From the IMG/VR virus record IMGVR_UViG_3300023083_000001, positions 1 to 64,000 of that record: 64,000 nt of DNA; one strand, 5' to 3'. The first letter of the stretch is position 1. The number at the start of each line of letters is the position of its first letter. The notes below the pieces were generated by a model. That model was given only the letters and a program-made list of their open reading frames with translations. It had not been told where the DNA came from and did no database searches. This document shows, one piece after another, positions 9,636 to 37,101 of this stretch. The position numbers were made by a program, and so were the translations under genes.

Positions 9636-11477
9636 ATGTTGAATAAAGTCGATCGTGAATTTCACAGTTTGTACGAACGTATCCTCAAAGACGGCGCTTT
9701 GAAAGAAGACCGTACCGGTGTGGGTACTATCATGTTACCAGCGCAGACAATGCGCTTTGATTGCCGGGATGGGAAGATGCCGATCCTCTCCACTCGCAAG
9801 ATCCACACGCGTAGCTTTATTCACGAGATGCTCTGGTTCATCTCTGGTGAGAGCAGCATCAAGTACCTGCGTGACAACAAGGTCGGTATCTGGGACAGTT
9901 GGTTTATCAAAGGTACTGACAAGTACGACGAACCGGTAACCAAATACTTGGCAGTTGAAGAACGTCTCAAGTTACCAGAAGCGATTAACCGCTGGGAGGA
10001 GATTGATTTCACCCTGAAGACCGCTTTGGAAAACGCCATTGGTGTCGGTAGTGCTCAACTGGAAATGGTTACACCAGACGGCACTGTCATCGAATACCGA
10101 AACCTCAACGGCCAGGTGTATAGCGAGTTCAGTAAATACCTGGATACGCTACAAGTTCCGACCCACGCTACGCCGGCTATTATCGGGCTTGATCTTAACC
10201 AACGTTTGACTTGGGCTCTAGACCACGGTCATAACGACGCTGTCTACGAGTACAGTCGTGTACTACCCGGCAGCGCTGATCATCAGGTTGCTCAGATCAC
10301 ACTCAAGGACCGCAATGGTGATCGTGTTGTCATCGGCTTAGGTAAGTCGCACGTTAACGAACTAAATGACTTCCTGACATCCCTCGGCGCGCCGACGGTA
10401 AGGTCAAATGGCAGCGATCCGATTTCACTTCAACGCCGGCTGGCTCGTGTCTCCAAGAACGATACTGACAAGTGGGACGCTATCAATCGCGTTATCGACG
10501 AAGACTGGGAAAGTCTGCGTGTCAACTGGGTGGGTGAATCCATCTTGAATGCCGAAGACTCCAAAGACTACGTTGTCTTCCGTGAAGGTAAGTTCCAGAC
10601 CGTCACGCTGATCCCACTGGTGGCCGCTTGCGTCAATGAACGGTTGAACCAACTGAAAGTCCCAGCCTACGAACTCCTCGATGCTGACATCGGTCAAGGT
10701 GGTTACGGTCCCCAGTGGCGTAAATGGCAGGATACTCAAATGGTCCATCATTCTGACAAAGCGACTTACGAGGCTCAAGGATATCACCGCATAACCGAGA
10801 TACAAGTAGAGCACGCATCTTACGATTATGCTGGTTTGGTTATCATGCATCGTGAAATCGATCAGCTGCAAAACGTGATCGACAAGCTGATGATCAACCC
10901 TGACGACCGCCGTATGATCGTTACGGCTCACAACCCTGGCCGTACCTGGCAGGCAGCGCTGCCGCCGTGTCATCTGTACTTCCAGTTTGTTACGCGTTTG
11001 GGTACCGAAGCTGAACTTTTTCAGATCATTGAAAAATCGAACTTGGTCGAACAGTTCAAAGGGGAGTTAGCAACCACTCCCATGCGTCGAAATCAAACTC
11101 GCGATTTCATGATTCGTTTCTGCAACAAACATTCCATCTCAACACGTTACCTAACGTTGTACGTGCAGCTCAGGTCTAACGATGTTCCGTTGGGCGCAGT
11201 TTTCAATGTGGCACAATACGCATTGTTGTTACACATGGTCGCTCAGGTGGTCAACATGGAACCTGACGAACTGATCAGCATGGGTGTGGATTCACACATC
11301 TATCTAAATCAGGTCGACCACATCAAAGAACTCCTCGAGCGTGAGTCGCCAGAAACAACTGATCCTCGGGTGGTCTTTAAGCGTCAAGTGGCAAGTATCG
11401 ATGACTTCACGTTTGACGACATCGAGATCGTAGGTTATGAAAGCGGTCCTGAGTTGAAGATCCCAGTAGCTGTCTAA
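9636..11477 (+). CDS. thyA: thymidylate synthase with large insertions (613 aa)
   Basis: DRTGVGT, EMLWFISG, YGPQWR, PDDRRMIV, ALPPCH, RSNDVPLGAVFN (dUMP-specifying Asn), DSHIYLNQ. Confidence 0.95.
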   Translation: MLNKVDREFHSLYERILKDGALKEDRTGVGTIMLPAQTMRFDCRDGKMPILSTRKIHTRSFIHEMLWFISGESSIKYLRDNKVGIWDSWFIKGTDKYDEPVTKYLAVEERLKLPEAINRWEEIDFTLKTALENAIGVGSAQLEMVTPDGTVIEYRNLNGQVYSEFSKYLDTLQVPTHATPAIIGLDLNQRLTWALDHGHNDAVYEYSRVLPGSADHQVAQITLKDRNGDRVVIGLGKSHVNELNDFLTSLGAPTVRSNGSDPISLQRRLARVSKNDTDKWDAINRVIDEDWESLRVNWVGESILNAEDSKDYVVFREGKFQTVTLIPLVAACVNERLNQLKVPAYELLDADIGQGGYGPQWRKWQDTQMVHHSDKATYEAQGYHRITEIQVEHASYDYAGLVIMHREIDQLQNVIDKLMINPDDRRMIVTAHNPGRTWQAALPPCHLYFQFVTRLGTEAELFQIIEKSNLVEQFKGELATTPMRRNQTRDFMIRFCNKHSISTRYLTLYVQLRSNDVPLGAVFNVAQYALLLHMVAQVVNMEPDELISMGVDSHIYLNQVDHIKELLERESPETTDPRVVFKRQVASIDDFTFDDIEIVGYESGPELKIPVAV

Positions 11478-26471: not shown

Positions 26472-27836
26472 ATGGATTTCGTTAACTGGCTTAAAGATCA
26501 ATACGGTGTACTCAACGCAATGTCGCCGATTGCTGGTGGTGTGGTACTTGCGAGTTTGATGGGTCTGATCTACGCGACTTTGCGTGGATTGCCAAAGGTT
26601 ATCTATACGGCAACCTTGAATCAGTGCATTACCAGCCTCACGTTCACCAACGCTGGGGCATGGACTGAAGAGCGTGTGGGTTTCACCTCCTTCATGGGTT
26701 GGTTTATTTCCAACAAGTGGTCAAGGCATTCCAGAAACATCAGCATGGTTACGGTCGGCGATAACGTCGTCTTTGGTCCTGGGAATGGCCGCCACTTCTT
26801 CTTCTACAAAGGTAAGCTCTTCTGGTTCAATAAAGAAGCGCTTGCCAGCAGCGGTACGCATGTCGAGAAAGAACGCATCACTATCGTGACCTTTGGCCGT
26901 GATCAGGAAAAGCTCAAAGAGATCGTGAAGTCGTTCATGCCCAAACCTGAAGACGGTAAGCCTCGGGTCTATACGTTCACTCACGACAACAATTGGCAGT
27001 ATCTGTGCACTATCCCACGTCGTGACTTGTCTACAGTGGTGATCGACAAGGAAACCAAAGCTCATCTGGTCAAGAAGCTCGAGGAGTTCGCTGCTAGCGA
27101 AGAATGGTTTAAATCCAAAGGCTTAGCCTGGAAGTTGACCGTGATCCTGCACGGTGTTCCAGGTACCGGGAAGACCAGCCTAGTCAAGGCACTTGCTAGT
27201 CACTACGGGAAGAACATTGCCTCGCTCAATATCTCTGGCGTGTCTGACGCTCAGTTTGAGAAAGCGGTGAGTAGTCTGCCGGAGAATACGTGGTTGTTGG
27301 TTGAAGACTTCGACAGCGCCAATGCAGTCAAGTCTCGTGGCCTGAGCCGTAAAGCACCTGCGCCAACACCCGGAAAAGAAATTGTAGCACCGGCAAGTGA
27401 CGGCATCAAACCAGCAGCACCCGTTAAGAAAATGGATGCGGTGGATAGTCTGATCGAGGAGTTCACTCGTCTGTCTCTGACCAAGGTGCTCAATACGCTG
27501 GATGGCATTGTGAGTCTGGATAATTCGGTGATCTGGCTGACCACTAACGCTCTGGACCGTATCGATGAAGCAGTGACTCGTAAGGGTCGAGTGGACCACA
27601 TCTGGGAGATCAAACTCCTGGAAGACCCTGAAGTGCGCGAATACATCAACATGGTGTTCCCTGATCACGAGATCAAGAACCCAGGCAAGTTCTCTCAAAT
27701 CGCAGGCTGTGACTTACAGGCATTGTTCCTGGAAGAGCGATTTGACTCGGCAGCATTTGAACAATCGATTCCGAAAGAGTTCAGAGCGCCGTTTGTCCAC
27801 TCGGTCAACAGTAACACGCATTTGTACCAATCCTAG
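26472..27836 (+). CDS. BCS1-like membrane-anchored AAA ATPase
   Basis: N-terminal TM, BCS1_N-like FGPGNGRHFFFYKGKLFW..ERITIVTFGRD; GVPGTGKTS, LLVEDFD, LNTLDG, RKGRVD. Confidence 0.85.
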   Translation: MDFVNWLKDQYGVLNAMSPIAGGVVLASLMGLIYATLRGLPKVIYTATLNQCITSLTFTNAGAWTEERVGFTSFMGWFISNKWSRHSRNISMVTVGDNVVFGPGNGRHFFFYKGKLFWFNKEALASSGTHVEKERITIVTFGRDQEKLKEIVKSFMPKPEDGKPRVYTFTHDNNWQYLCTIPRRDLSTVVIDKETKAHLVKKLEEFAASEEWFKSKGLAWKLTVILHGVPGTGKTSLVKALASHYGKNIASLNISGVSDAQFEKAVSSLPENTWLLVEDFDSANAVKSRGLSRKAPAPTPGKEIVAPASDGIKPAAPVKKMDAVDSLIEEFTRLSLTKVLNTLDGIVSLDNSVIWLTTNALDRIDEAVTRKGRVDHIWEIKLLEDPEVREYINMVFPDHEIKNPGKFSQIAGCDLQALFLEERFDSAAFEQSIPKEFRAPFVHSVNSNTHLYQS

Positions 27837-27900
27837 TTCACCCCACCGCCGACATCCCGTCGGCGTACTACTCACTCCACACGGAGTAAGGAAAAGCCAC

Positions 27901-28899
27901 ATGGCTACCATTTATGATGCACAGGTTCCCAAAAGCTGGATCGCACCAAATGTCAACGCCGACATCCTCACGTACTTGGTGTCGTGCGCTGCGAACAACC
28001 TCACGGTTACTTATCGAGACGTACAATCCAAAGTTAGGTACCATTTAGCAAATACCCTTGACGACTCTAAAATCATCATCACCACCAACGTCGCCTTGAC
28101 CAGCATCTTCGATTGGTGTATGAAGAAAGAATGGCCTCCTCTGACCTGTTTGATCGCGCGCAGTTCGGGTGAAGATAAAGGCCTACCTGCACGCAGGTTC
28201 TGGGAAATGTTAGACCAAACTAATTACGTCCAGGACTTTTATTCCGAAACGTCCTTGGTGGATGCGCCTAAAGAGATCCGTGAACTCTGCACGCGTTATT
28301 TACAGCAGCGGTGTTTCAACTATTTCGCAGGACTGAAAGTTACATCGGCCGCTTTGGTTACTCAGCAAGGTTCGACCGTAACGCCAGATACCCCAGCTGA
28401 ATCGTCAGACCTCCCCATCACCAGAAACTGGCTCCATAACCGCGCCTCGCAAGAGTACGGATATCACCAGTTGACGGACGATGATAAAGAACGGATAGCT
28501 AAAAGGTTCGTTGGGGAAACATGCAGTTTTTTCGAAACGTTTATCGAGCGAGTTAATGTTAAAAATAGGGTAAATGACGCCAATCCCAAGCGGGCTTGGT
28601 TAGAGGTTCTAGACGGTTATTGTCCCCTGGTGAATCAAGCTCCTATAAACGACACGACCAAAGTTCTCGGCACTATCCTAACGCTACCTGGGTTCAATGA
28701 TCTCAGTCACACTGTACAGGCTGAGATCAAAACGCACTTCGGGCGCATTCACGACGATATCCAGTCGGATATTAACCAGTTCGTTGAAGCCGTGAAACGT
28801 GACCAGAGCGTTTACTGTCATTTAGGTGGTATGTCGCTCTCTGACGTAATCCTTTACCTGTTCGCCAAGATCAGCGTCGAGTTTAACCGTTCACTGTAA
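27901..28899 (+). CDS. winged-helix-like paralog with C-terminal extension
   Basis: TVTYRDV...WC...WPPLTCLIARSSG...GLPARRFW. Confidence 0.6.
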   Translation: MATIYDAQVPKSWIAPNVNADILTYLVSCAANNLTVTYRDVQSKVRYHLANTLDDSKIIITTNVALTSIFDWCMKKEWPPLTCLIARSSGEDKGLPARRFWEMLDQTNYVQDFYSETSLVDAPKEIRELCTRYLQQRCFNYFAGLKVTSAALVTQQGSTVTPDTPAESSDLPITRNWLHNRASQEYGYHQLTDDDKERIAKRFVGETCSFFETFIERVNVKNRVNDANPKRAWLEVLDGYCPLVNQAPINDTTKVLGTILTLPGFNDLSHTVQAEIKTHFGRIHDDIQSDINQFVEAVKRDQSVYCHLGGMSLSDVILYLFAKISVEFNRSL

Positions 28900-30316: not shown

Positions 30317-30643
30317 TCATGATTTCTTCTCGCACAGACATTTTCGACAAAGACAGGTATCACCAGCGTCTGCCATCTCTGGTTTACTTTCCCGTACTAC
30401 AGTCATGCACCAACAGGTGTTAGCTGACTTACCGCCTTCCATAGCGCAGTATGCCGGGCCTTCACAGCTTGGACAGGTGTGAGTGCTAGTCTGTCCTTTA
30501 AGTTGGTTCATGAGCGCCATACGGTCGTCCACGGGTTTGTTTCTCCAGTCCTTGAGTTCATCACGGGTCCGCAGGCATCCTTTACAGATGCCATTGACTA
30601 GACCGCATTCAGAGATGCAAGGACTTACGATGGGTTGATTCAT
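30317..30643 (-). CDS. DUF1289 / cysteine-rich CWC Fe-S or Zn protein
   Basis: SPCISECGL..ICKGCLRT.DE..DW; CPSC...C...CWCM...CLCRKCL. Confidence 0.8.
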   Translation of the reverse strand: MNQPIVSPCISECGLVNGICKGCLRTRDELKDWRNKPVDDRMALMNQLKGQTSTHTCPSCEGPAYCAMEGGKSANTCWCMTVVRESKPEMADAGDTCLCRKCLCEKKS

Positions 30644-31077: not shown

Positions 31078-32301
31078 TTACACGTTAGCCGCTGCGTAAG
31101 CATCGGCACGTGCAGCCAGGTCAGGTACTTCACACGCGCCGCCGGCGCAAGCTGCTGCACCCATGGTGTCGACTTCGGTGTAGGTTTCCTGAACGAGCTG
31201 GTCAGCGAAGTTGATCGGTTGCATGGAACGAGTGATGTTCTCCCACTTGTGGAGGTTGTAGACGTCCTTCAAGCAGAAGGTCATCTTCTCCAGGTTACCG
31301 CCGAAGTAGTTACCCGCAAACTTCTTGGCACGGCGTACCCAGTCGCGTGGCAGCAACAGATCAGAGTTGTCGCCAGAGATGTCGATACCCTGACCCATCA
31401 CGGTGGAGCAACCCAACCACAGGTTGTTGTTAAACGCCTCCATGCCATCAACGATCAAGCCCGATGCAAAGATCGCACCTTCGCCGTACAGGTCCATGAT
31501 TTCCTGAGCTTCCAGGACTTCAGTGAACGGAGCCTGAGCGTATGCCTTGTCGCCACTGCCAGCCATCAGACTGATACCGGCAAAGTACTGACGGTTATCA
31601 AAGATGTACTGCTCAACTTCAGCCCACGCCTCGTCGGTGTTTTCTACCGAGATGGTGTTGGAGATGTTGTGGCGGATGCGTTTATCAACCGACAGGCTGT
31701 CATCGCTACCGTGCTCGATCCAGTTCTGCTGAGCCAACTTCACGTATTCCAGTTGCTTCTTGCCCAGCAGGTCTTTCTTGAAGATAGCCGTTTCACTGGA
31801 AACGATCGGGAAGGATACAACCAACGATTTGCCGTTGCTGTCCCAGACCGACTTCTCAACCATTTTCGGGTTGAACTCTTTGATCAGCGGCAGAACGGTT
31901 TCCTGGTCAGTCATCTGCACGTTACGGAAGTAACGCTTGGAGTGTGCGCCGTGGATGCCGGAGTCAGTGCCCAGCAGGACCGAGGCATTACCCGACGGCT
32001 TGGTGGTGGTGGTACGTGGTGCGGGATTGATACCAATCAGCTTGGCAATTTTCTTGTTAGTAGCCAGTACCAACTCAGCCGCAAGCTTCATGTGTTGAGG
32101 ATCGAACAACACACCTGGTTCAGTCATCCATCCGGTGATTGAAACGCCCAACAGAGCCTCGCGCTCAGTGATCTCACGAGTAGCGTCGCCAAGGTAAGTG
32201 AAGTTAGTGTAACCAGCTTGAAGCGTACCCATGATGCCGCCAGCTTTGCTGGCTCGCAGCAGTGCCGCAAGCGTTGTGCACTGCGCGCCATTGGTTTCAG
32301 T
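31078..32301 (-). CDS. nrdJ: class II (AdoCbl-dependent, monomeric) ribonucleotide reductase, exon 2
   Basis: Begins ACT GAA ACC AAT (TETN) after the intron; LLGVSITG, TTTKPSGNAS, HNISNTI, YAQAPF, C-terminal ACAGGACE redox pair. Confidence 0.9.
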   Translation of the reverse strand, partial: TETNGAQCTTLAALLRASKAGGIMGTLQAGYTNFTYLGDATREITEREALLGVSITGWMTEPGVLFDPQHMKLAAELVLATNKKIAKLIGINPAPRTTTTKPSGNASVLLGTDSGIHGAHSKRYFRNVQMTDQETVLPLIKEFNPKMVEKSVWDSNGKSLVVSFPIVSSETAIFKKDLLGKKQLEYVKLAQQNWIEHGSDDSLSVDKRIRHNISNTISVENTDEAWAEVEQYIFDNRQYFAGISLMAGSGDKAYAQAPFTEVLEAQEIMDLYGEGAIFASGLIVDGMEAFNNNLWLGCSTVMGQGIDISGDNSDLLLPRDWVRRAKKFAGNYFGGNLEKMTFCLKDVYNLHKWENITRSMQPINFADQLVQETYTEVDTMGAAACAGGACEVPDLAARADAYAAANV

Positions 32302-32800
32302 CTTTATGTTCAAGGATCAGCGTTAGTCGATCCTCGGGGATTTCTTCGTACGTCCTATACACCCAGTCAGCAAACTTCAACAACTGCGATGGTGTTGCGA
32401 ATGACTTCATCGAGTTTGCCAACTGACTAATTACCTGAACGTTTCCTGGAGCGTAATCGATCGTAGTATCAATTCTATCCAAAGATGGGGAATTGTACTT
32501 CCCACCTGGAGACCCGGAATGGCAGACCAACGGAATGTCCAATACAGGACATCTTTCTGGAATGACGATATCGGCAACGGTAAGACTACAGATCGACTGC
32601 CTGTGTGTACTTCTGGCTTTGGCTCTCGCCAACATCCTGGACTCAGCGCTAGAGCTTTTCACACGCGCCGAGTTACATTTACCGCAAAGGGTAACTGTCT
32701 TAGAAGTCTTTGGAAACATCATACGGCAATTAGTACACTGCCTCTCCGTGTCGGAAATTAAGTTACCTTCACGATTGAGACGGTATTGGGTGGTGGTCAT
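32297..32800 (-). CDS. intron-encoded HNH-superfamily homing endonuclease
   Basis: N-terminal CxxC..CxxC, CPVL, SLDRID....Y.PGNVQVISQLANSMK beta-beta-alpha-Me motif; located 3' of P9. Confidence 0.85.
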   Translation of the reverse strand: MTTTQYRLNREGNLISDTERQCTNCRMMFPKTSKTVTLCGKCNSARVKSSSAESRMLARAKARSTHRQSICSLTVADIVIPERCPVLDIPLVCHSGSPGGKYNSPSLDRIDTTIDYAPGNVQVISQLANSMKSFATPSQLLKFADWVYRTYEEIPEDRLTLILEHKD

Positions 32801-33161
32801 ACGGACATCCTTGAGTTCTGTAATCTACATACTATTCAGAATTCAAGTATATCTACCCACCTGCAAGTCTCCTTGCAGAACAGACTACATCATCACCGAC
32901 TCCTGTCGGTGCTACGCGCTTCCCACCACTTGGCGGTACTCTACTCATCACCTATGTCATCATCCATGTAGGTGCTTTCGATAGTCGTTGAACCCGATTC
33001 GTGATACGTTAGACGTACTTTAGAACCTCGGCTGCTGATTGTCCTGTAATGATAGATTTTCAAGCATTCACGCTCACCGTTTCCAGTCACGTTGTAGCTC
33101 TATCACCTTTAGGAGTTTCCAGCAATTCGCGTAGTTTATTAACGTAACCTCATTGATGTTT
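32302..33161 (-). mobile_element. group I intron (IA2-like), 860 nt, in nrdJ
   Basis: P1 GUAACCUU/GAGGUUAC with U-G at the splice site; P AAUUGCUGGAA, Q AAUCAGCAG, R UUCAACGACUA, S GAUGUAGUC; P3 CUACGCG/CGCGUAG; terminal G; removal restores FCNL|TETN in frame. Confidence 0.93.
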
Positions 33162-34220
33162 AAGGTTACAGAATTGAAAGCCTGAACGACCGTCTTCGGT
33201 GTAAGCCCGCAGACCGATCTCGACACACGGGTTGTAACCCTGCTCGCTGTCTTCTGCGAAGATGAAGCCAGGCTCGCCGAATTCACGAACGGACTTCATG
33301 ATGGTTGCCCACTCAGAACGACCCAGCTCACTGCGGATCAGCAGTGCAGAGTTGTTAGAACGACCACGTTGCGGGTTGGTGGTGTACCAATCGCCTGTCT
33401 TGGCGGTGAGCATTTCTTTGTCATCTTTGGAGAAGATGCAGATCGTTGCAGCGCGCCGTATACCGCCTGACAGAACAGCGTCAGCCATGTGCATGACGAA
33501 GTCGTACGCGTGGATCGGTTTGAGCTGCAATTCAAGGTCTGGGTGTGCGATGCCATCAAGTAGTTCGCGACACTTCTCCAGAGAGCGTTGCAGGCCGTCA
33601 GGACCCGGTGCTTTAAAGCCGCCGGAGATCAATGCGCCGCGTGGACGGACTTCGGAGTAATCGAAGTGCACCTGAGTGTTCTTGTACTCAGGGAACGTAC
33701 CGCCGTCAACGAAGTAGCTGGATAGCAGAACGCCGAATGCGTCAGACCAACCTTCAATGCTGTCCGGCACGACGAAGACTTTGGCTTTGTCTTTACCAGG
33801 TGCAGTGACTTTCGGCAACTTGGCGATGTGGTGCTTTTGTACGGAGAACCCAACACCGCAGCCTGCCAGCAACAGATACATGGCGTGTTGGAAGAACTCG
33901 GTACGGTCGCAGTAGCTGAACGAGCAGTTGTACATACGCGCTTCGTGCTGGAAGATCTGAGGACCACCAAACTGCAAAGCACGCTGGGAGCCAAGTACGG
34001 CTTTATCTTTGTAAGCCAATTCAGCGAAGGCAATTGCCTCTTCCAACTCAGGTGACATTACCGCTGCATACTTCTCGCGGTGCATGTCCATCACACGCTC
34101 TACCGCCTCATCCCACGTCTCATACCGCCCAAGCTTCTCGGAGAACCGAGAATAACCCATGAAAAACTTGGAATCAGCCAACATGTCTTTGGCTAGGCTA
34201 GGTTGGAAGTTAGAATTCAT
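33162..34220 (-). CDS. nrdJ: class II ribonucleotide reductase, exon 1
   Basis: GGAG RBS before ATG 34220; YSR...ETWDEAVERV, MYNCS, GCGVGFS, GGIRRAA, GEPG, NPCVEI (thiyl Cys), FCNL. Confidence 0.9.
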
Positions 34221-34751
34221 TAACAGCTCCGTTGTGTTTTCGTATGACAAATTCTGGAGGATTTACGGTCCCTATATCGCTAGTGACCAGGGTTAAAATC
34301 TACTCTTATTTTTCGTCTTGGACATATACTAAGGTCTGATTTTTCGATTGACTTAATGGTATTAAAACTTAACGTTCAAGCGCTATATATTGACCCCGCA
34401 AACCCTTACTTTGGAGCGTTATCATGAGCAAACAACCGACCTACAGTTCAATCCCAGACCCAAGGGATTTTACACCCAATCAACCAGCAGTTATCCTCCA
34501 ACCGGTTGACGTCAGTGCGATCTGCAATTTCGCAGAGATCTACCCTACCGGAGCCAGCGAAGAAGTTAAGTTCATCGCTAACACTAATCATGTCATCGAT
34601 CTGGCTAGAACGGCCGGGTGGGGTGAGATTACCTTGATAGGTAAACAGATCCTGCTGGTAGCTAAACTCTCCCTGGACGATCCCGGCGTGCCTGCAAAAG
34701 CTGACGAGTAAGCTCCAGATCGTATAACCTACCTTACTGCGGTTATACGTC

Positions 34752-36827: not shown

Positions 36828-36912
36828 GGAGAGGTTCCCGAGCGGTCAAAGGGGGCAGACTGTAAATCTGCTGTCGCGTACTTCGAAGGTTCGAATCCTT
36901 CTCTCTCCACCA
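36828..36912 (+). tRNA. tRNA-Tyr (GTA)
   Basis: GGAGAGG/TCTCTCC acceptor, GCAGA-CTGTAAA-TCTGC anticodon arm, long V arm, GAAGG-TTCGAAT-CCTTC, encoded ACCA. Confidence 0.97.
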
Positions 36913-37015: not shown

Positions 37016-37101
37016 GGATCGATAGGGAAGTGGCTTAACCCAACGGCCTGCAAAGCCGTCTTCGAAAGATACCGTCAGTTCAAATCTGACTCGATCCTCC
37101 A
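37016..37101 (+). tRNA. tRNA-Cys (GCA) with long variable region
   Basis: GGATCGA/TCGATCC acceptor, U73, CCA; ACGGC-CTGCAAA-GCCGT; GTCAG-TTCAAAT-CTGAC. Confidence 0.92.

What the first reader, a model, noticed from the sequence alone, without database searches (positions are those of the whole stretch)
32302..33161. Group I intron interrupts class II RNR immediately after the catalytic CNL motif
Seen: complete P1 with U-G wobble, P3, P7, extra helices between P7 and P3' (IA2 layout), P8, P9 and terminal G; splicing restores NPCVEI...FCNL|TETN. Automated annotation would call two RNR fragments. Known: phage introns target nrdB, nrdD, nrdE/F and td; to my knowledge insertions in monomeric nrdJ of jumbo phages are less documented, and intron endonucleases of nucleus-forming phages can mediate interference between co-infecting phages.
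Basis: partly seen in the sequence, partly recalled or inferred. Interest (0 to 1): 0.62.

Follow-up and report, generated by a model that had tools for sequence, protein, structure and literature searches.

The report
Mobile group I intron splitting phage nrdJ
A self-splicing-type group I intron carrying its own homing-endonuclease gene splits the B12-dependent ribonucleotide reductase gene of an uncultivated phiKZ-like jumbo phage; it is a real but fairly ordinary mobile element, from a widespread intron family that existing annotation misses.

Summary
Confirmed. On the minus strand, an 860-nt group I intron (33161..32302) sits between nrdJ exon 1 (34250..33162, ending FCNL) and exon 2 (32301..31081, starting TETN).

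- **Intron identity:** Rfam RF00028 scores 73.7 bits against a cut-off of 50.
- **Exact junction:** 71 intron-less homologues have the two exon matches exactly adjacent. A 151-nt DNA contig from a second leaf-litter metagenome is about 98.6% identical and lacks the 860 nt (CTA|ACA).
- **Structure:** 15 homologous introns share P3-P9, with 99% of cells paired and 23 of 36 pairs compensatory. All have a U.G at the 5' splice site. A covarying 2-bp P9.0 and a 3'-terminal hairpin mark the distant 3' splice site.
- **Endonuclease gene:** It is a zinc-ribbon plus PacI-like beta-beta-alpha-metal nuclease with no Pfam match.
- **Host gene and phage:** the reductase is of the L. leichmannii RTPR type, and the intron follows the Cys419 equivalent. 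The 258-kb genome encodes chimallin, PhuZ and nvRNAP homologues.
- **Family spread:** the same intron plus endonuclease lies unannotated in Roseobacter phage CRP-7, Rhizobium phage RHph_N3_13 and many metagenomic contigs, at sites -6, 0 or +1.

No RNA data exist, so splicing and homing are inferred. I rate it a new member of a known kind, of moderate interest.

The parts
33162..34250 (-). nrdJ exon 1. It encodes the N-terminal 363 aa of an RTPR-type class II ribonucleotide reductase and ends ...NPCVEI...FQFCNL. The start codon is uncertain: TTG at 34250 or ATG at 34220.
   Evidence: PHROG 367 ribonucleotide reductase 6e-56. TIGR02505 RTPR 3e-34. PDB 1L1L 1e-16. tblastn to intron-less homologues ends exactly at residue 363.
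32302..33161 (-). Group I intron, 860 nt, IA2-type layout, ending in omega-G at 32302.
   Evidence: RF00028 73.7 bits. Exact adjacency of the exons in 71 intron-less homologues. An intron-less near-identical DNA contig skips it.
33143..33170 (-). P1. The 5' exon strand UGUAACCUU (33170..33162) pairs with the internal guide GAGGUUACG (33151..33143), with U33162.G33151 at the splice site. The L1 loop holds the in-frame stop UGA (33152..33150) of the exon-1 reading frame and the P10 partner UCAAU (33156..33152).
   Evidence: Sequence, script and MFE fold. All 15 family members have a U.G at the 5' splice site.
32912..33134 (-). P3 (33134..33128 with 32918..32912), which encloses P4 (33124..33119 with 33038..33033), P5 plus its extension with a GAAA loop (33115..33041), P6/P6a/P6b (33032..32992), the 5' strand of P7 (32986..32982), P7.1 (32981..32939) and P7.2 (32936..32923).
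   Evidence: RNAalifold and pair counts on alignment A2: P3, P4, P5, P6 and P7.2 all show compensatory changes. MFE fold.
32861..32911 (-). P8 hairpin (32911..32894), J8/7, the 3' strand of P7 UAGUC (32887..32883), J7/9 UGUU whose last two U (32880..32879) form the 5' half of P9.0, and the P9 hairpin (32878..32861).
   Evidence: P7 is invariant in all 15 sequences. P9 has 6 of 7 pairs with compensatory change.
32808..32847 (-). P9.1-like hairpin (32847..32810). Its 3' strand covers part of the Shine-Dalgarno AAGGA (32812..32808) of the endonuclease ORF.
   Evidence: strand folding: window -17.6 kcal/mol (z -1.9). The closest relative L091 forms a 19-bp perfect hairpin (-31.1 kcal/mol, z -7.4).
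32297..32800 (-). Intron-encoded endonuclease ORF, 167 aa, with an N-terminal Cys4 zinc ribbon and a PacI-like beta-beta-alpha-metal (HNH-superfamily) nuclease domain. The stop codon TGA (32299..32297) lies in exon 2.
   Evidence: phrog_3322 endonuclease 5e-23, phrog_1035 endonuclease VII 7.5e-14, phrog_3118 HNH 1.8e-6. AlphaFold model pLDDT 92.4. Best PDB match PacI 3LDY: Foldseek prob 0.99, E 7e-3; VIA-align Z 6.7, rmsd 3.3 over 86 aa. 149 homologues.
32302..32336 (-). 3'-terminal domain. It comprises a hairpin CGAGGAUCG[ACUAACGC]UGAUCCUUG (32336..32311), then AACAUAAAG, with AA (32304..32303) as the 3' half of P9.0 and omega-G at 32302. It overlaps the last codons of the ORF.
   Evidence: Script: 14 of 15 family members have a stem of at least 7 bp here, and all 15 stems differ, around an invariant UA(A/G)CG loop. 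Script: P9.0 pairs in 13 of 15, with six different dinucleotide combinations. Strand folding.
31081..32301 (-). nrdJ exon 2, 407 aa. It starts TETNGAQ, and its C-terminal tail holds the CAGGAC cysteine pair. The stop codon is 31080..31078. The first bases ACUGA (32301..32297) can form P10 with UCAAU in L1.
   Evidence: PHROG 367 5.5e-25. TIGR02505 4.9e-12. PDB 1L1L including the C-terminal C..GGAC match. Adjacency in homologues.

Best explanation
This is a mobile group I intron of IA2-type architecture, inserted in the adenosylcobalamin-dependent, RTPR-type ribonucleotide reductase gene (nrdJ) of a phiKZ-like, chimallin-encoding jumbo phage. It sits directly after the Leu codon of the FCNL motif, whose cysteine is the equivalent of RTPR Cys419.

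Proposed mechanism:
1. The gene is transcribed as one pre-mRNA. The exon-1 reading frame stops three codons into the intron.
2. The ribozyme folds. P1 presents U33162.G33151, and exogenous guanosine bound in P7 attacks the 5' splice site.
3. The 3' splice site lies 560 nt beyond the catalytic core. It is brought in by a 2-bp P9.0 (UU of J7/9 with AA before omega-G), by P10 (ACUGA with UCAAU) and by a conserved 3'-terminal hairpin.
4. Exon ligation restores ...FCNL-TETN... and therefore a single-chain reductase.
5. The segment between P9 and the 3'-terminal hairpin encodes a zinc-ribbon plus PacI-like beta-beta-alpha-metal endonuclease. Its ribosome-binding site is partly buried in a hairpin.
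6. This enzyme is inferred to cut or nick intron-less nrdJ alleles near the CNL site during co-infection. Repair from the intron-bearing genome then copies the intron in (homing).

Shown here: the sequence, the conserved structure, the exact boundaries, the presence/absence polymorphism, and the linkage of the ORF family with nrdJ. Inferred: self-splicing, endonuclease activity and homing.
For: - **Intron model:** RF00028 73.7 bits over the full-length model. The MFE fold recovers P1 and P3-P9, z -4.5.
- **Exact insertion:** 71 of the 80 nearest nrdJ loci have exon 1 and exon 2 adjacent to the base. Intron-less GenBank phages RHph_I1_18, VPs20, PD0307 and Mel-JY01 show the same.
- **Polymorphism:** a contig about 98.6% identical in a second leaf-litter metagenome joins 32298 to 33163 with TGTT between. 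That is an intron-less CTA|ACA allele. A more diverged intron-less relative (QKCNL|TETN) lies in the source sample. The three nearest relatives (86%/81% aa, contigs of 254 and 188 kb) are intron-less.
- **Homologous introns:** they occur with the same ORF in 14 other loci. Covariation: 99.1% of cells paired, 23 of 36 pairs compensatory, 0 of 500 shuffles. P9.0 pairs in 13 of 15 with six combinations, and a U.G is present in all 15. The 3' hairpin has 15 different stems.
- **Base at -1:** all 10 intron-bearing alleles at this site end exon 1 in CTT. Only 13 of 71 intron-less alleles have T there.
- **In-frame stop:** one lies at or just inside the 5' end of every family member.
- **ORF:** PHROG endonuclease families. 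Confident model whose best match is PacI, followed by other HNH nucleases. Invariant D108, Y116, N120, N129 and K132, plus a Cys4 ribbon, in 81 sequences. Every one of 15 examined homologues sits inside nrdJ.
- **Reductase:** RTPR type. NPC aligns with Cys408 and CNL with Cys419.
Against: - No RNA evidence exists. The only public runs that hold this DNA are DNA metagenomes kept as contigs.
- Self-splicing and endonuclease activity were not and could not be tested here.
- The ORF has no Pfam or NCBIfam match. The histidine at the usual HNH position (H102) is not conserved in the family, so activity rests on a PacI-like, tyrosine-based analogy recalled from memory.
- The structural match to PacI is modest (Z 6.7, TM about 0.4).
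- Translation of the ORF runs through the 3' hairpin, P9.0 and the splice site, and could interfere with splicing.
- The intron-less allele rests on a single 151-nt contig of depth 2.8.
- P10 in the window has one mismatch in 5 bp.
Confidence: 0.9

Rival explanations
1. Genes in pieces. The intron is a splicing-dead relic or is irrelevant, and the reductase is made as two polypeptides (N and C halves) that assemble. The precedents are Aeromonas phage Aeh1 NrdA-a/NrdA-b split by mobE and Thermus phage phiYS40 nrdJa/nrdJb.
For: Such split but functional RNRs are reported in phages (PMC3653736, read). A TTG codon four codons upstream of exon 2 gives a mechanical ORF, 31078..32313. No RNA data exist.
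Against: Every core helix, the U.G pair, omega-G, P9.0 and P10 are intact in the window and maintained by compensatory changes across 15 loci. All intron-bearing alleles keep T at -1. There is no Shine-Dalgarno at a suitable distance before the TTG. The break lies inside the active-site loop, between the Cys419 equivalent and the next strand.
Confidence: 0.05
2. The intron splices, but the ORF is a decayed or domesticated protein that no longer promotes homing. Examples would be a maturase-like or DNA-binding protein, or the 'Srd sigma decoy' annotated in GenBank. On this view the intron is now inherited only vertically.
For: No Pfam HNH match. H102 is not conserved. RHph_N3_13 and S-CBS4 homologues are annotated as Srd/anti-sigma decoys. 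The nearest intron-less relatives differ at about 6 of 30 bases around the site.
Against: The ORF is full length and under conservation: invariant D108, Y116, N120, N129 and K132 plus the Cys4 ribbon in 81 sequences. The fold is a nuclease fold. The same intron and ORF occur in nrdJ genes only about 30% identical in protein, and at three neighbouring sites, which needs horizontal movement. Presence/absence polymorphism exists between phages about 98.6% identical.
Confidence: 0.2
3. An intein or another in-frame element, rather than an RNA intron.
For: nrdJ is a known intein target near the NPC cysteine (PMC2677866). Relatives carry other insertions there.
Against: The exon-1 frame hits UGA 3 codons into the insert. 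The ORF is in another arrangement, with its own start. No Hint or intein domains were found. There is a strong RF00028 match and RNA covariation.
Confidence: 0.01

Closest known systems
Phage T4 nrdD (sunY) intron with I-TevII
   Same: A group IA2-type phage intron in a ribonucleotide reductase gene. The endonuclease ORF lies downstream of the catalytic core (after P9), so the 3' splice site is remote and has to be recruited by P9.0, P10 and 3'-terminal pairings (own knowledge of Shub, Xu and Michel's work; not re-checked here).
   Different: The target is class II nrdJ, not class III nrdD. The endonuclease is a PacI-like beta-beta-alpha-metal protein, not GIY-YIG. No detectable sequence relationship was sought or shown.
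Phage T4 nrdB intron/I-TevIII and Staphylococcus phage Twort nrdE introns/I-TwoI
   Same: Self-splicing group I introns with HNH-superfamily endonucleases, inserted next to catalytically important, conserved residues of RNR genes (PMC3653736).
   Different: Those are in class I genes, and the ORFs sit in other loops. The endonucleases there are canonical HNH, whereas here the family lacks a conserved first histidine and has no Pfam match.
PhiPA3 gp210 intron endonuclease (chimallivirus vRNAP gene)
   Same: A group I intron with an endonuclease in a nucleus-forming jumbo phage. The endonuclease can act on an intron-less relative during co-infection (PMC11620839 and PMC12908238).
   Different: The target gene differs (RNA polymerase subunit versus nrdJ). 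Homology between the two endonucleases was not tested. No competition data exist for this phage.
Unannotated nrdJ introns in Roseobacter phage CRP-7 and Rhizobium phage RHph_N3_13
   Same: Homologous intron core (RF00028 79.2 and 83.6 bits), homologous ORF (47-52% identity), the same 3'-terminal hairpin and GAACAUAA motif, and the same target motif FCNL.
   Different: They are inserted 6 nt upstream (FC|NL), with a matching change of the internal guide sequence. They lack the P5 extension, and the host nrdJ is only about 30% identical.
Restriction endonuclease PacI (PDB 3LDY)
   Same: The best structural match of the ORF's nuclease domain. Both have zinc-bound motifs around a beta-beta-alpha-metal site. 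In both, a tyrosine rather than the canonical histidine may act; Y116 is invariant here, and the PacI mechanism is recalled from memory.
   Different: 14% identity and modest Z (6.7). PacI is a dimeric restriction enzyme of a bacterial R-M system, not intron-encoded.

Membership tests
Group I intron (Rfam RF00028) | Covariance-model score at or above the curated gathering score | tested here: met
   73.7 bits against 50, full model 1-253, E 8e-17.
Group I intron (Rfam RF00028) | P1 formed by the 5' exon and internal guide, with a U.G pair at the 5' splice site | tested here: met
   UGUAACCUU/GAGGUUACG with U33162.G33151. A U.G is present in all 15 family members, and the guide covaries with the exon (AACCUU/GAGGUU, AAUCUU/GAGAUU, UUCUGU/GCAGAA).
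Group I intron (Rfam RF00028) | Conserved core P3-P8 with the P3/P7 pseudoknot, supported by covariation | tested here: met
   99.1% of cells paired, 23 of 36 pairs compensatory, 0 of 500 shuffles, slid controls 27-40%. P7 is invariant, so it is neither supported nor contradicted by covariation.
Group I intron (Rfam RF00028) | Terminal guanosine (omega-G) at the 3' splice site, with P9.0/P10 | tested here: met
   G at 32302. P9.0 pairs in 13 of 15 with six combinations. P10 pairs at 4 of 5 positions in the window.
Group I intron (Rfam RF00028) | Guanosine-dependent self-splicing | not testable with these tools
   No RNA runs hold the locus. An in vitro assay is needed.
Subgroup IA2 | Extra helices P7.1 and P7.2 between P7 and P3' | tested here: met
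   P7.1 at 32981..32939 and P7.2 at 32936..32923. P7.2 has 5 of 5 pairs with compensatory change. Other subgroup criteria were not examined.
HNH / His-Me finger (beta-beta-alpha-metal) homing endonuclease | Beta-beta-alpha-metal nuclease fold | tested here: met
   Model pLDDT 92.4. Matches: PacI Z 6.7, Gme HNH 4.9, Hpy99I 4.6, T4 endonuclease VII 3.5, Cas9 HNH 3.0. PHROG endonuclease, endonuclease VII and HNH families. The Z values are modest.
HNH / His-Me finger (beta-beta-alpha-metal) homing endonuclease | Match to curated HNH profiles and a conserved catalytic histidine | tested here: not met
   No Pfam or NCBIfam hit. H102 is not conserved in 81 homologues, whereas D108, Y116, N120, N129 and K132 are invariant. 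So it works like an HNH-superfamily nuclease but is not a canonical HNH member.
HNH / His-Me finger (beta-beta-alpha-metal) homing endonuclease | Site-specific cleavage of the intron-less allele and homing | not testable with these tools
   Only indirect evidence: strict linkage of the ORF family with nrdJ in 15 of 15 contexts, occurrence in nrdJ genes about 30% identical, and intron presence/absence polymorphism.
Class II RNR, monomeric RTPR type (TIGR02505) | Score above the equivalog cut-off | tested here: inconclusive
   Exon 1 scores 118 bits and exon 2 scores 45 bits against a cut-off of 340. The exons were searched separately by rule, and the joined protein was not scored. RTPR is the best family for both, and 1L1L is the only significant PDB hit.
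Class II RNR, monomeric RTPR type (TIGR02505) | Active-site N-P-C-x-E (Cys408), second redox cysteine C-N-L (Cys419) and a C-terminal cysteine pair | tested here: met
   A profile of intron-less relatives aligns NPCvEI...CNL to 1L1L residues 406-421. The window has NPCVEI, FCNL and the C-terminal CAGGAC. The functional roles of these residues come from my own knowledge.
Chimalliviridae (nucleus-forming jumbo phages) | Chimallin, PhuZ tubulin and multisubunit nvRNAP genes | tested here: met
   Homologues of phiKZ gp54 (E 1.6e-10, covering 23-598 of 626), gp39 (9e-26) and gp74 (4e-75) in the 258-kb genome. A phiKZ_IP head protein lies in the window. Nucleus formation itself is not testable here.

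The most novel reading that the evidence does not exclude
The window holds the chimallivirus member of a large, so far undescribed family of nrdJ-homing IA2 introns. Their PacI-like nuclease lacks the canonical histidine.

Under this reading:
1. The family has re-targeted itself among three insertion points within 7 nt (FC|NL, CNL| and CNL+1) by changing its internal guide sequence.
2. In this phage the intron would splice inside a ribosome-free phage nucleus.
3. Its endonuclease would have to be imported there.
4. It would then act against the near-identical intron-less phages that co-occur in leaf litter. That would give homing and/or interference competition, as shown for PhiPA3 gp210.
Probability: 0.2. 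Interest if true: 0.6.

Novelty: new member of a known kind. Interest (0 to 1): 0.38.

Why it matters
- **Annotation:** this gene, and homologous genes in cultured phages such as CRP-7 and RHph_N3_13, are called as two reductase fragments plus a hypothetical or 'sigma decoy' ORF. Recognising the intron restores one intact nrdJ and identifies the ORF as a likely homing endonuclease.
- **Biology:** the finding adds class II (B12-dependent, RTPR-type) reductases to the list of phage RNR genes colonised by group I introns, again right at an active-site cysteine. It defines a sizeable endonuclease family with no Pfam model (149 homologues).
- **Study systems:** near-identical intron-bearing and intron-less phages co-occur in related samples, which offers a natural case for homing or phage-phage competition in a nucleus-forming phage. 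The homologous introns at three offset sites give a small natural experiment on how guide sequence and insertion site co-evolve.
- **Limits:** none of this overturns current understanding.

Tried and rejected
- **GenBank relatives:** a near-identity DNA search of GenBank phages with the locus and with 22 kb of neighbouring window found no relative. It returned only 66-74-nt matches of the P3-P5 core to introns of Enterococcus and Shewanella phages, and one tRNA.
- **ORF by profile and sequence:** Pfam and NCBIfam gave nothing on the ORF. phmmer of the ORF against PDB gave only a chance zinc-ribbon match. The fold search was needed.
- **Placing CNL on 1L1L:** single-sequence alignments of the exons or of an intron-less homologue to 1L1L did not reach the NPC/CNL region. 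A profile of nine intron-less relatives did.
- **RNA evidence:** no RNA run holds the locus, so splicing could not be observed.
- **Promoters:** the sigma-70 promoter/terminator scan gave nothing above shuffles on the gene strand, and it is not informative for a phage with its own RNA polymerase.
- **3' elements:** I looked for a partner of the invariant UA(A/G)CG loop and of the GAACAUAA segment and found no conserved complement. Their roles remain open beyond P9.0.
- **Other interruptions:** RF00028 does not match the other interruptions of nrdJ relatives near the NPC cysteine, nor the 235-nt insert of phage KLEP7.
- **Rejected readings:** an intein, because of in-frame stops; and a free-standing endonuclease between two genes, because the ORF lies inside the splice boundaries.
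- **Joined exons:** The only joined item was a 72-nt in-script comparison of the exon ends with natural intron-less alleles.
- **Literature:** searches found no description of a group I intron in a phage nrdJ. The library lacks most subscription journals, so prior description cannot be excluded.
- **Failed call:** one alignment call failed on a wrong frame and was repeated without that sequence.
Full report
**Observation**

The feature is on the minus strand. Rfam's group I intron model (RF00028) matches 33171..32861 (-) at 73.7 bits against a gathering score of 50, over the whole model. It is the only such match in the 258,357-bp genome.

Reading the RNA gives the following.
- The 5' exon ends ...UUC UGU AAC CUU (F C N L). 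Its last nine bases UGUAACCUU pair with GAGGUUACG ten bases into the intron. U33162 lies opposite G33151, the U.G wobble that marks a group I 5' splice site.
- The exon-1 reading frame runs on for three codons (AAA CAU CAA) and stops at UGA inside the P1 loop.
- Downstream lie P3 (7 bp), P4, P5 with an extension ending in a GAAA loop, P6/6a/6b, P7 (GACUA/UAGUC), two extra hairpins P7.1 and P7.2 before P3', then P8 and P9.
- The thermodynamic fold of 33171..32852 alone recovers all of these except the pseudoknotted P7 (-103 kcal/mol, z -4.5).
- The intron ends ...GAACAUAAAG at 32302, and exon 2 starts ACU GAA ACC AAU (T E T N).

**The junction is exact**

The joined protein was never built, searched or folded.
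- In GenBank phages RHph_I1_18, VPs20, PD0307 and Mel-JY01 the exon-1 match ends at the base before the exon-2 match begins.
- Among the 80 nearest loci in viral contigs, 71 show the same exact adjacency. These include the three closest relatives (86%/81% amino-acid identity, contigs of 254 and 188 kb), which are intron-less.
- Two leaf-litter metagenomes hold this DNA, both as DNA contigs only.
- In the second one, a 151-nt contig about 98.6% identical to the window joins 32298 to 33163 with TGTT between. On the gene strand this reads ...AAC CTA|ACA GAA... It is a precise intron-less allele that differs only by synonymous changes at -1 and +3.
- The source sample also contains a more diverged intron-less relative (QKCNL|TETN).

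So the 860 nt are an insertion/deletion polymorphism among closely related phages. That contig is single and shallow (depth 2.8).

**What is inside the intron**

The catalytic core ends at 32861, but the 3' splice site is 560 nt further on. The interval holds an ORF of 167 aa (32800..32297) whose stop codon lies 3 nt into exon 2.
- Pfam and NCBIfam do not recognise it.
- PHROGs place it in endonuclease families: phrog_3322 at 5e-23, endonuclease VII at 7.5e-14 and HNH at 1.8e-6.
- It has 149 homologues. An alignment of 81 of them shows a Cys4 zinc ribbon (C22, C25, C39, C42). P81, C84, D108, Y116, N120, N129 and K132 are invariant, but the histidine at the usual HNH position is not conserved.
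- An AlphaFold model is confident (pLDDT 92.4). Its best solved relative is the HNH restriction enzyme PacI (Foldseek probability 0.99; VIA-align Z 6.7, rmsd 3.3 over 86 residues). It is followed by Gme HNH, Hpy99I, T4 endonuclease VII and the Cas9 HNH domain.
- From memory, PacI is the HNH enzyme in which a tyrosine rather than a histidine is thought to start cleavage. The invariant Y116 fits that, but I did not test it.
- The ORF's Shine-Dalgarno (AAGGA, 32812..32808) lies partly in the 3' strand of a hairpin. In the closest relative this hairpin is a perfect 19-bp stem. That is reminiscent of the translational masking known for other phage homing-endonuclease genes (inference).

**A family of such introns**

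The ORF's relatives led to the same arrangement elsewhere: reductase N-part, about 300 nt of intron core, ORF, reductase C-part.
- It occurs in Roseobacter phage CRP-7 and Rhizobium phage RHph_N3_13. There the pieces are annotated as two partial reductases plus a hypothetical or 'Srd decoy' protein. RF00028 scores 79 and 84 bits.
- It also occurs in a dozen metagenomic contigs.
- All 15 contexts I examined are inside nrdJ.
- Ten introns, including the window's, sit at CNL|. Four sit 6 nt upstream (FC|NL). One sits 1 nt downstream.
- In each case the internal guide sequence matches its own exon and keeps a U.G pair.

On an alignment of the 15 cores (A2), RNAalifold finds P3, P4, P5, P6, P7.2 and P9.

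| Measure | Result |
|---|---|
| Cells paired, with P7 added | 99.1% |
| Pairs with changes on both sides | 23 of 36 |
| Shuffles reaching these values | 0 of 500 |
| Pairing when partners are slid | 27-40% |

P7 never varies, so it adds nothing either way.

**How the distant 3' splice site is found**

Three elements are conserved at the 3' end (A3).
- A hairpin ends 9-13 nt (usually 10) before the splice site. Its stem is different in all 15 sequences, with at least 7 bp in 14 of them, around an invariant UA(A/G)CG loop.
- A GAACAUAA-like single strand follows the hairpin.
- The two bases before the terminal G pair with the last two bases of J7/9 in 13 of 15 introns. Six different combinations occur (UU/AA in the window, also UA/UA, AG/CU, AU/AU, AA/UU and GU/AC). 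This is a covarying P9.0.

P10 is possible in the window: ACUGA with UCAAU, 4 of 5 pairs. As I recall it, this layout resembles that of the T4 nrdD (sunY) intron, where the ORF also follows the core.

Two further regularities fit a working intron.
- Every family member has an in-frame stop at or just inside its 5' end.
- All ten intron-bearing alleles at this site end exon 1 in CTT, as the U.G pair requires. Intron-less alleles use all six Leu codons, and only 13 of 71 have T there.

**The host gene and the phage**

- Both exons match only RTPR-type reductase models (TIGR02505) and the L. leichmannii RTPR structure 1L1L. Each is below the equivalog cut-off because the exons were scored separately.
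- A profile of nine natural intron-less relatives aligns NPCvEI...CNL to 1L1L residues 406-421. The NPC cysteine is therefore Cys408, and the CNL cysteine is Cys419.
- By my own knowledge these are the radical cysteine and one of the redox pair. The intron lies between the equivalents of Leu421 and Phe422.
- The C-terminal CAGGAC matches the RTPR tail.
- The genome has direct terminal repeats and is rated complete. It encodes homologues of phiKZ chimallin, PhuZ and nvRNAP beta, and the window holds a phiKZ-type internal head protein.

**Interpretation**

The best explanation is a mobile group I intron that splices to restore a single-chain NrdJ and carries a homing endonuclease.

| Status | Items |
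|---|---|
| Shown | Intact and conserved ribozyme structure; exact boundaries; ORF-nrdJ linkage; horizontal spread between nrdJ genes only about 30% identical; presence/absence polymorphism between near-identical phages |
| Inferred | Self-splicing; endonuclease activity; homing; any role in phage-phage competition |

- The main rival, a split gene giving two polypeptides, cannot be excluded without RNA or protein data. It is hard to square with the maintained splice-site pairings.
- A spliced intron whose ORF no longer promotes mobility is possible (about 0.2).

**Comparison and novelty**

Group I introns with endonuclease genes in phage RNR genes are classic: T4 nrdB and nrdD, Twort nrdE, SPbeta. 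The review read lists them.
- That survey found split nrdJ only in phiYS40 and P60, neither with an intron.
- My searches found no paper describing a group I intron in a phage nrdJ. The library is incomplete.
- Intron endonucleases in chimalliviruses are known from PhiPA3 gp210.

I therefore rate this a new member of a known kind: a new target gene and site, and an undescribed but widespread intron and endonuclease family. It matters for annotation and may serve as a study system, but it would not surprise a specialist.

Noticed in passing
L002 (Pseudaeromonas phage KLEP7, OM654377) about 1146-1380: The KLEP7 nrdJ is annotated as two CDS. About 235 non-coding nt sit inside the Cys codon of the NPC radical-cysteine motif (exon ...AAT CCG T | ... 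G | GT GCA GAA), with U and G at the ends as in a group I intron. RF00028 gives no match even at E up to 10.
   Followed up: partly
L039, L059, L064, L067/L068, L215 (about 1248-2099, LAGLIDADG_2 ORF) and L043: Several close nrdJ relatives are interrupted at other places. Most are at or next to the NPC cysteine (inserts of 0.24-1.6 kb). One is about 110 residues into the exon-2 part. L215 carries both a LAGLIDADG-containing insert at NPC and the CNL intron. None of the NPC inserts reaches the RF00028 threshold, so they may be inteins or other intron types.
   Followed up: partly
L003, L004, L085, L116 (site -6); L214 (site +1): Homologous introns with homologous endonuclease ORFs sit 6 nt upstream or 1 nt downstream of the window's site in the same FCNL motif. 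Their internal guide sequences are changed to match. This looks like re-targeting or sliding within a 7-nt window.
   Followed up: yes
window 9636-11474 (+): A 613-aa thymidylate synthase (PF00303, 1.6e-75, matched in two stretches) carries an in-frame insert of about 250 aa between profile positions about 87 and 88. No intein or other Pfam domain was detected in the insert.
   Followed up: no
window 36828-36912 and 37016-37101 (+): There are two phage tRNA genes with long variable arms. ARAGORN calls them tRNA-Tyr (GTA) and tRNA-Cys (GCA). The first region shares 78% identity with a tRNA-Leu region of Pseudomonas phage D6.
   Followed up: no
window 30320-30643 (-) and loci L091, L095, L216: A small DUF1289 plus Cys_rich_CWC protein gene lies just downstream of nrdJ. 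The same gene accompanies nrdJ in several unrelated contigs, which suggests a conserved partnership with the reductase.
   Followed up: no
Streptomyces phages, e.g. Jay2Jay KM652554 21945-22412: More distant relatives of the endonuclease (29-38% identity) lie as free-standing genes immediately downstream of nrdJ rather than inside it. The nuclease family therefore seems tied to nrdJ with or without an intron.
   Followed up: no
window 26472-27836 and 27709-28899 (+): Two long ORFs overlap by 128 nt on the same strand. The first is a BCS1_N plus AAA ATPase, and the second has no Pfam match. Possible explanations are a frameshift, a programmed shift, or simply overlapping genes.
   Followed up: no
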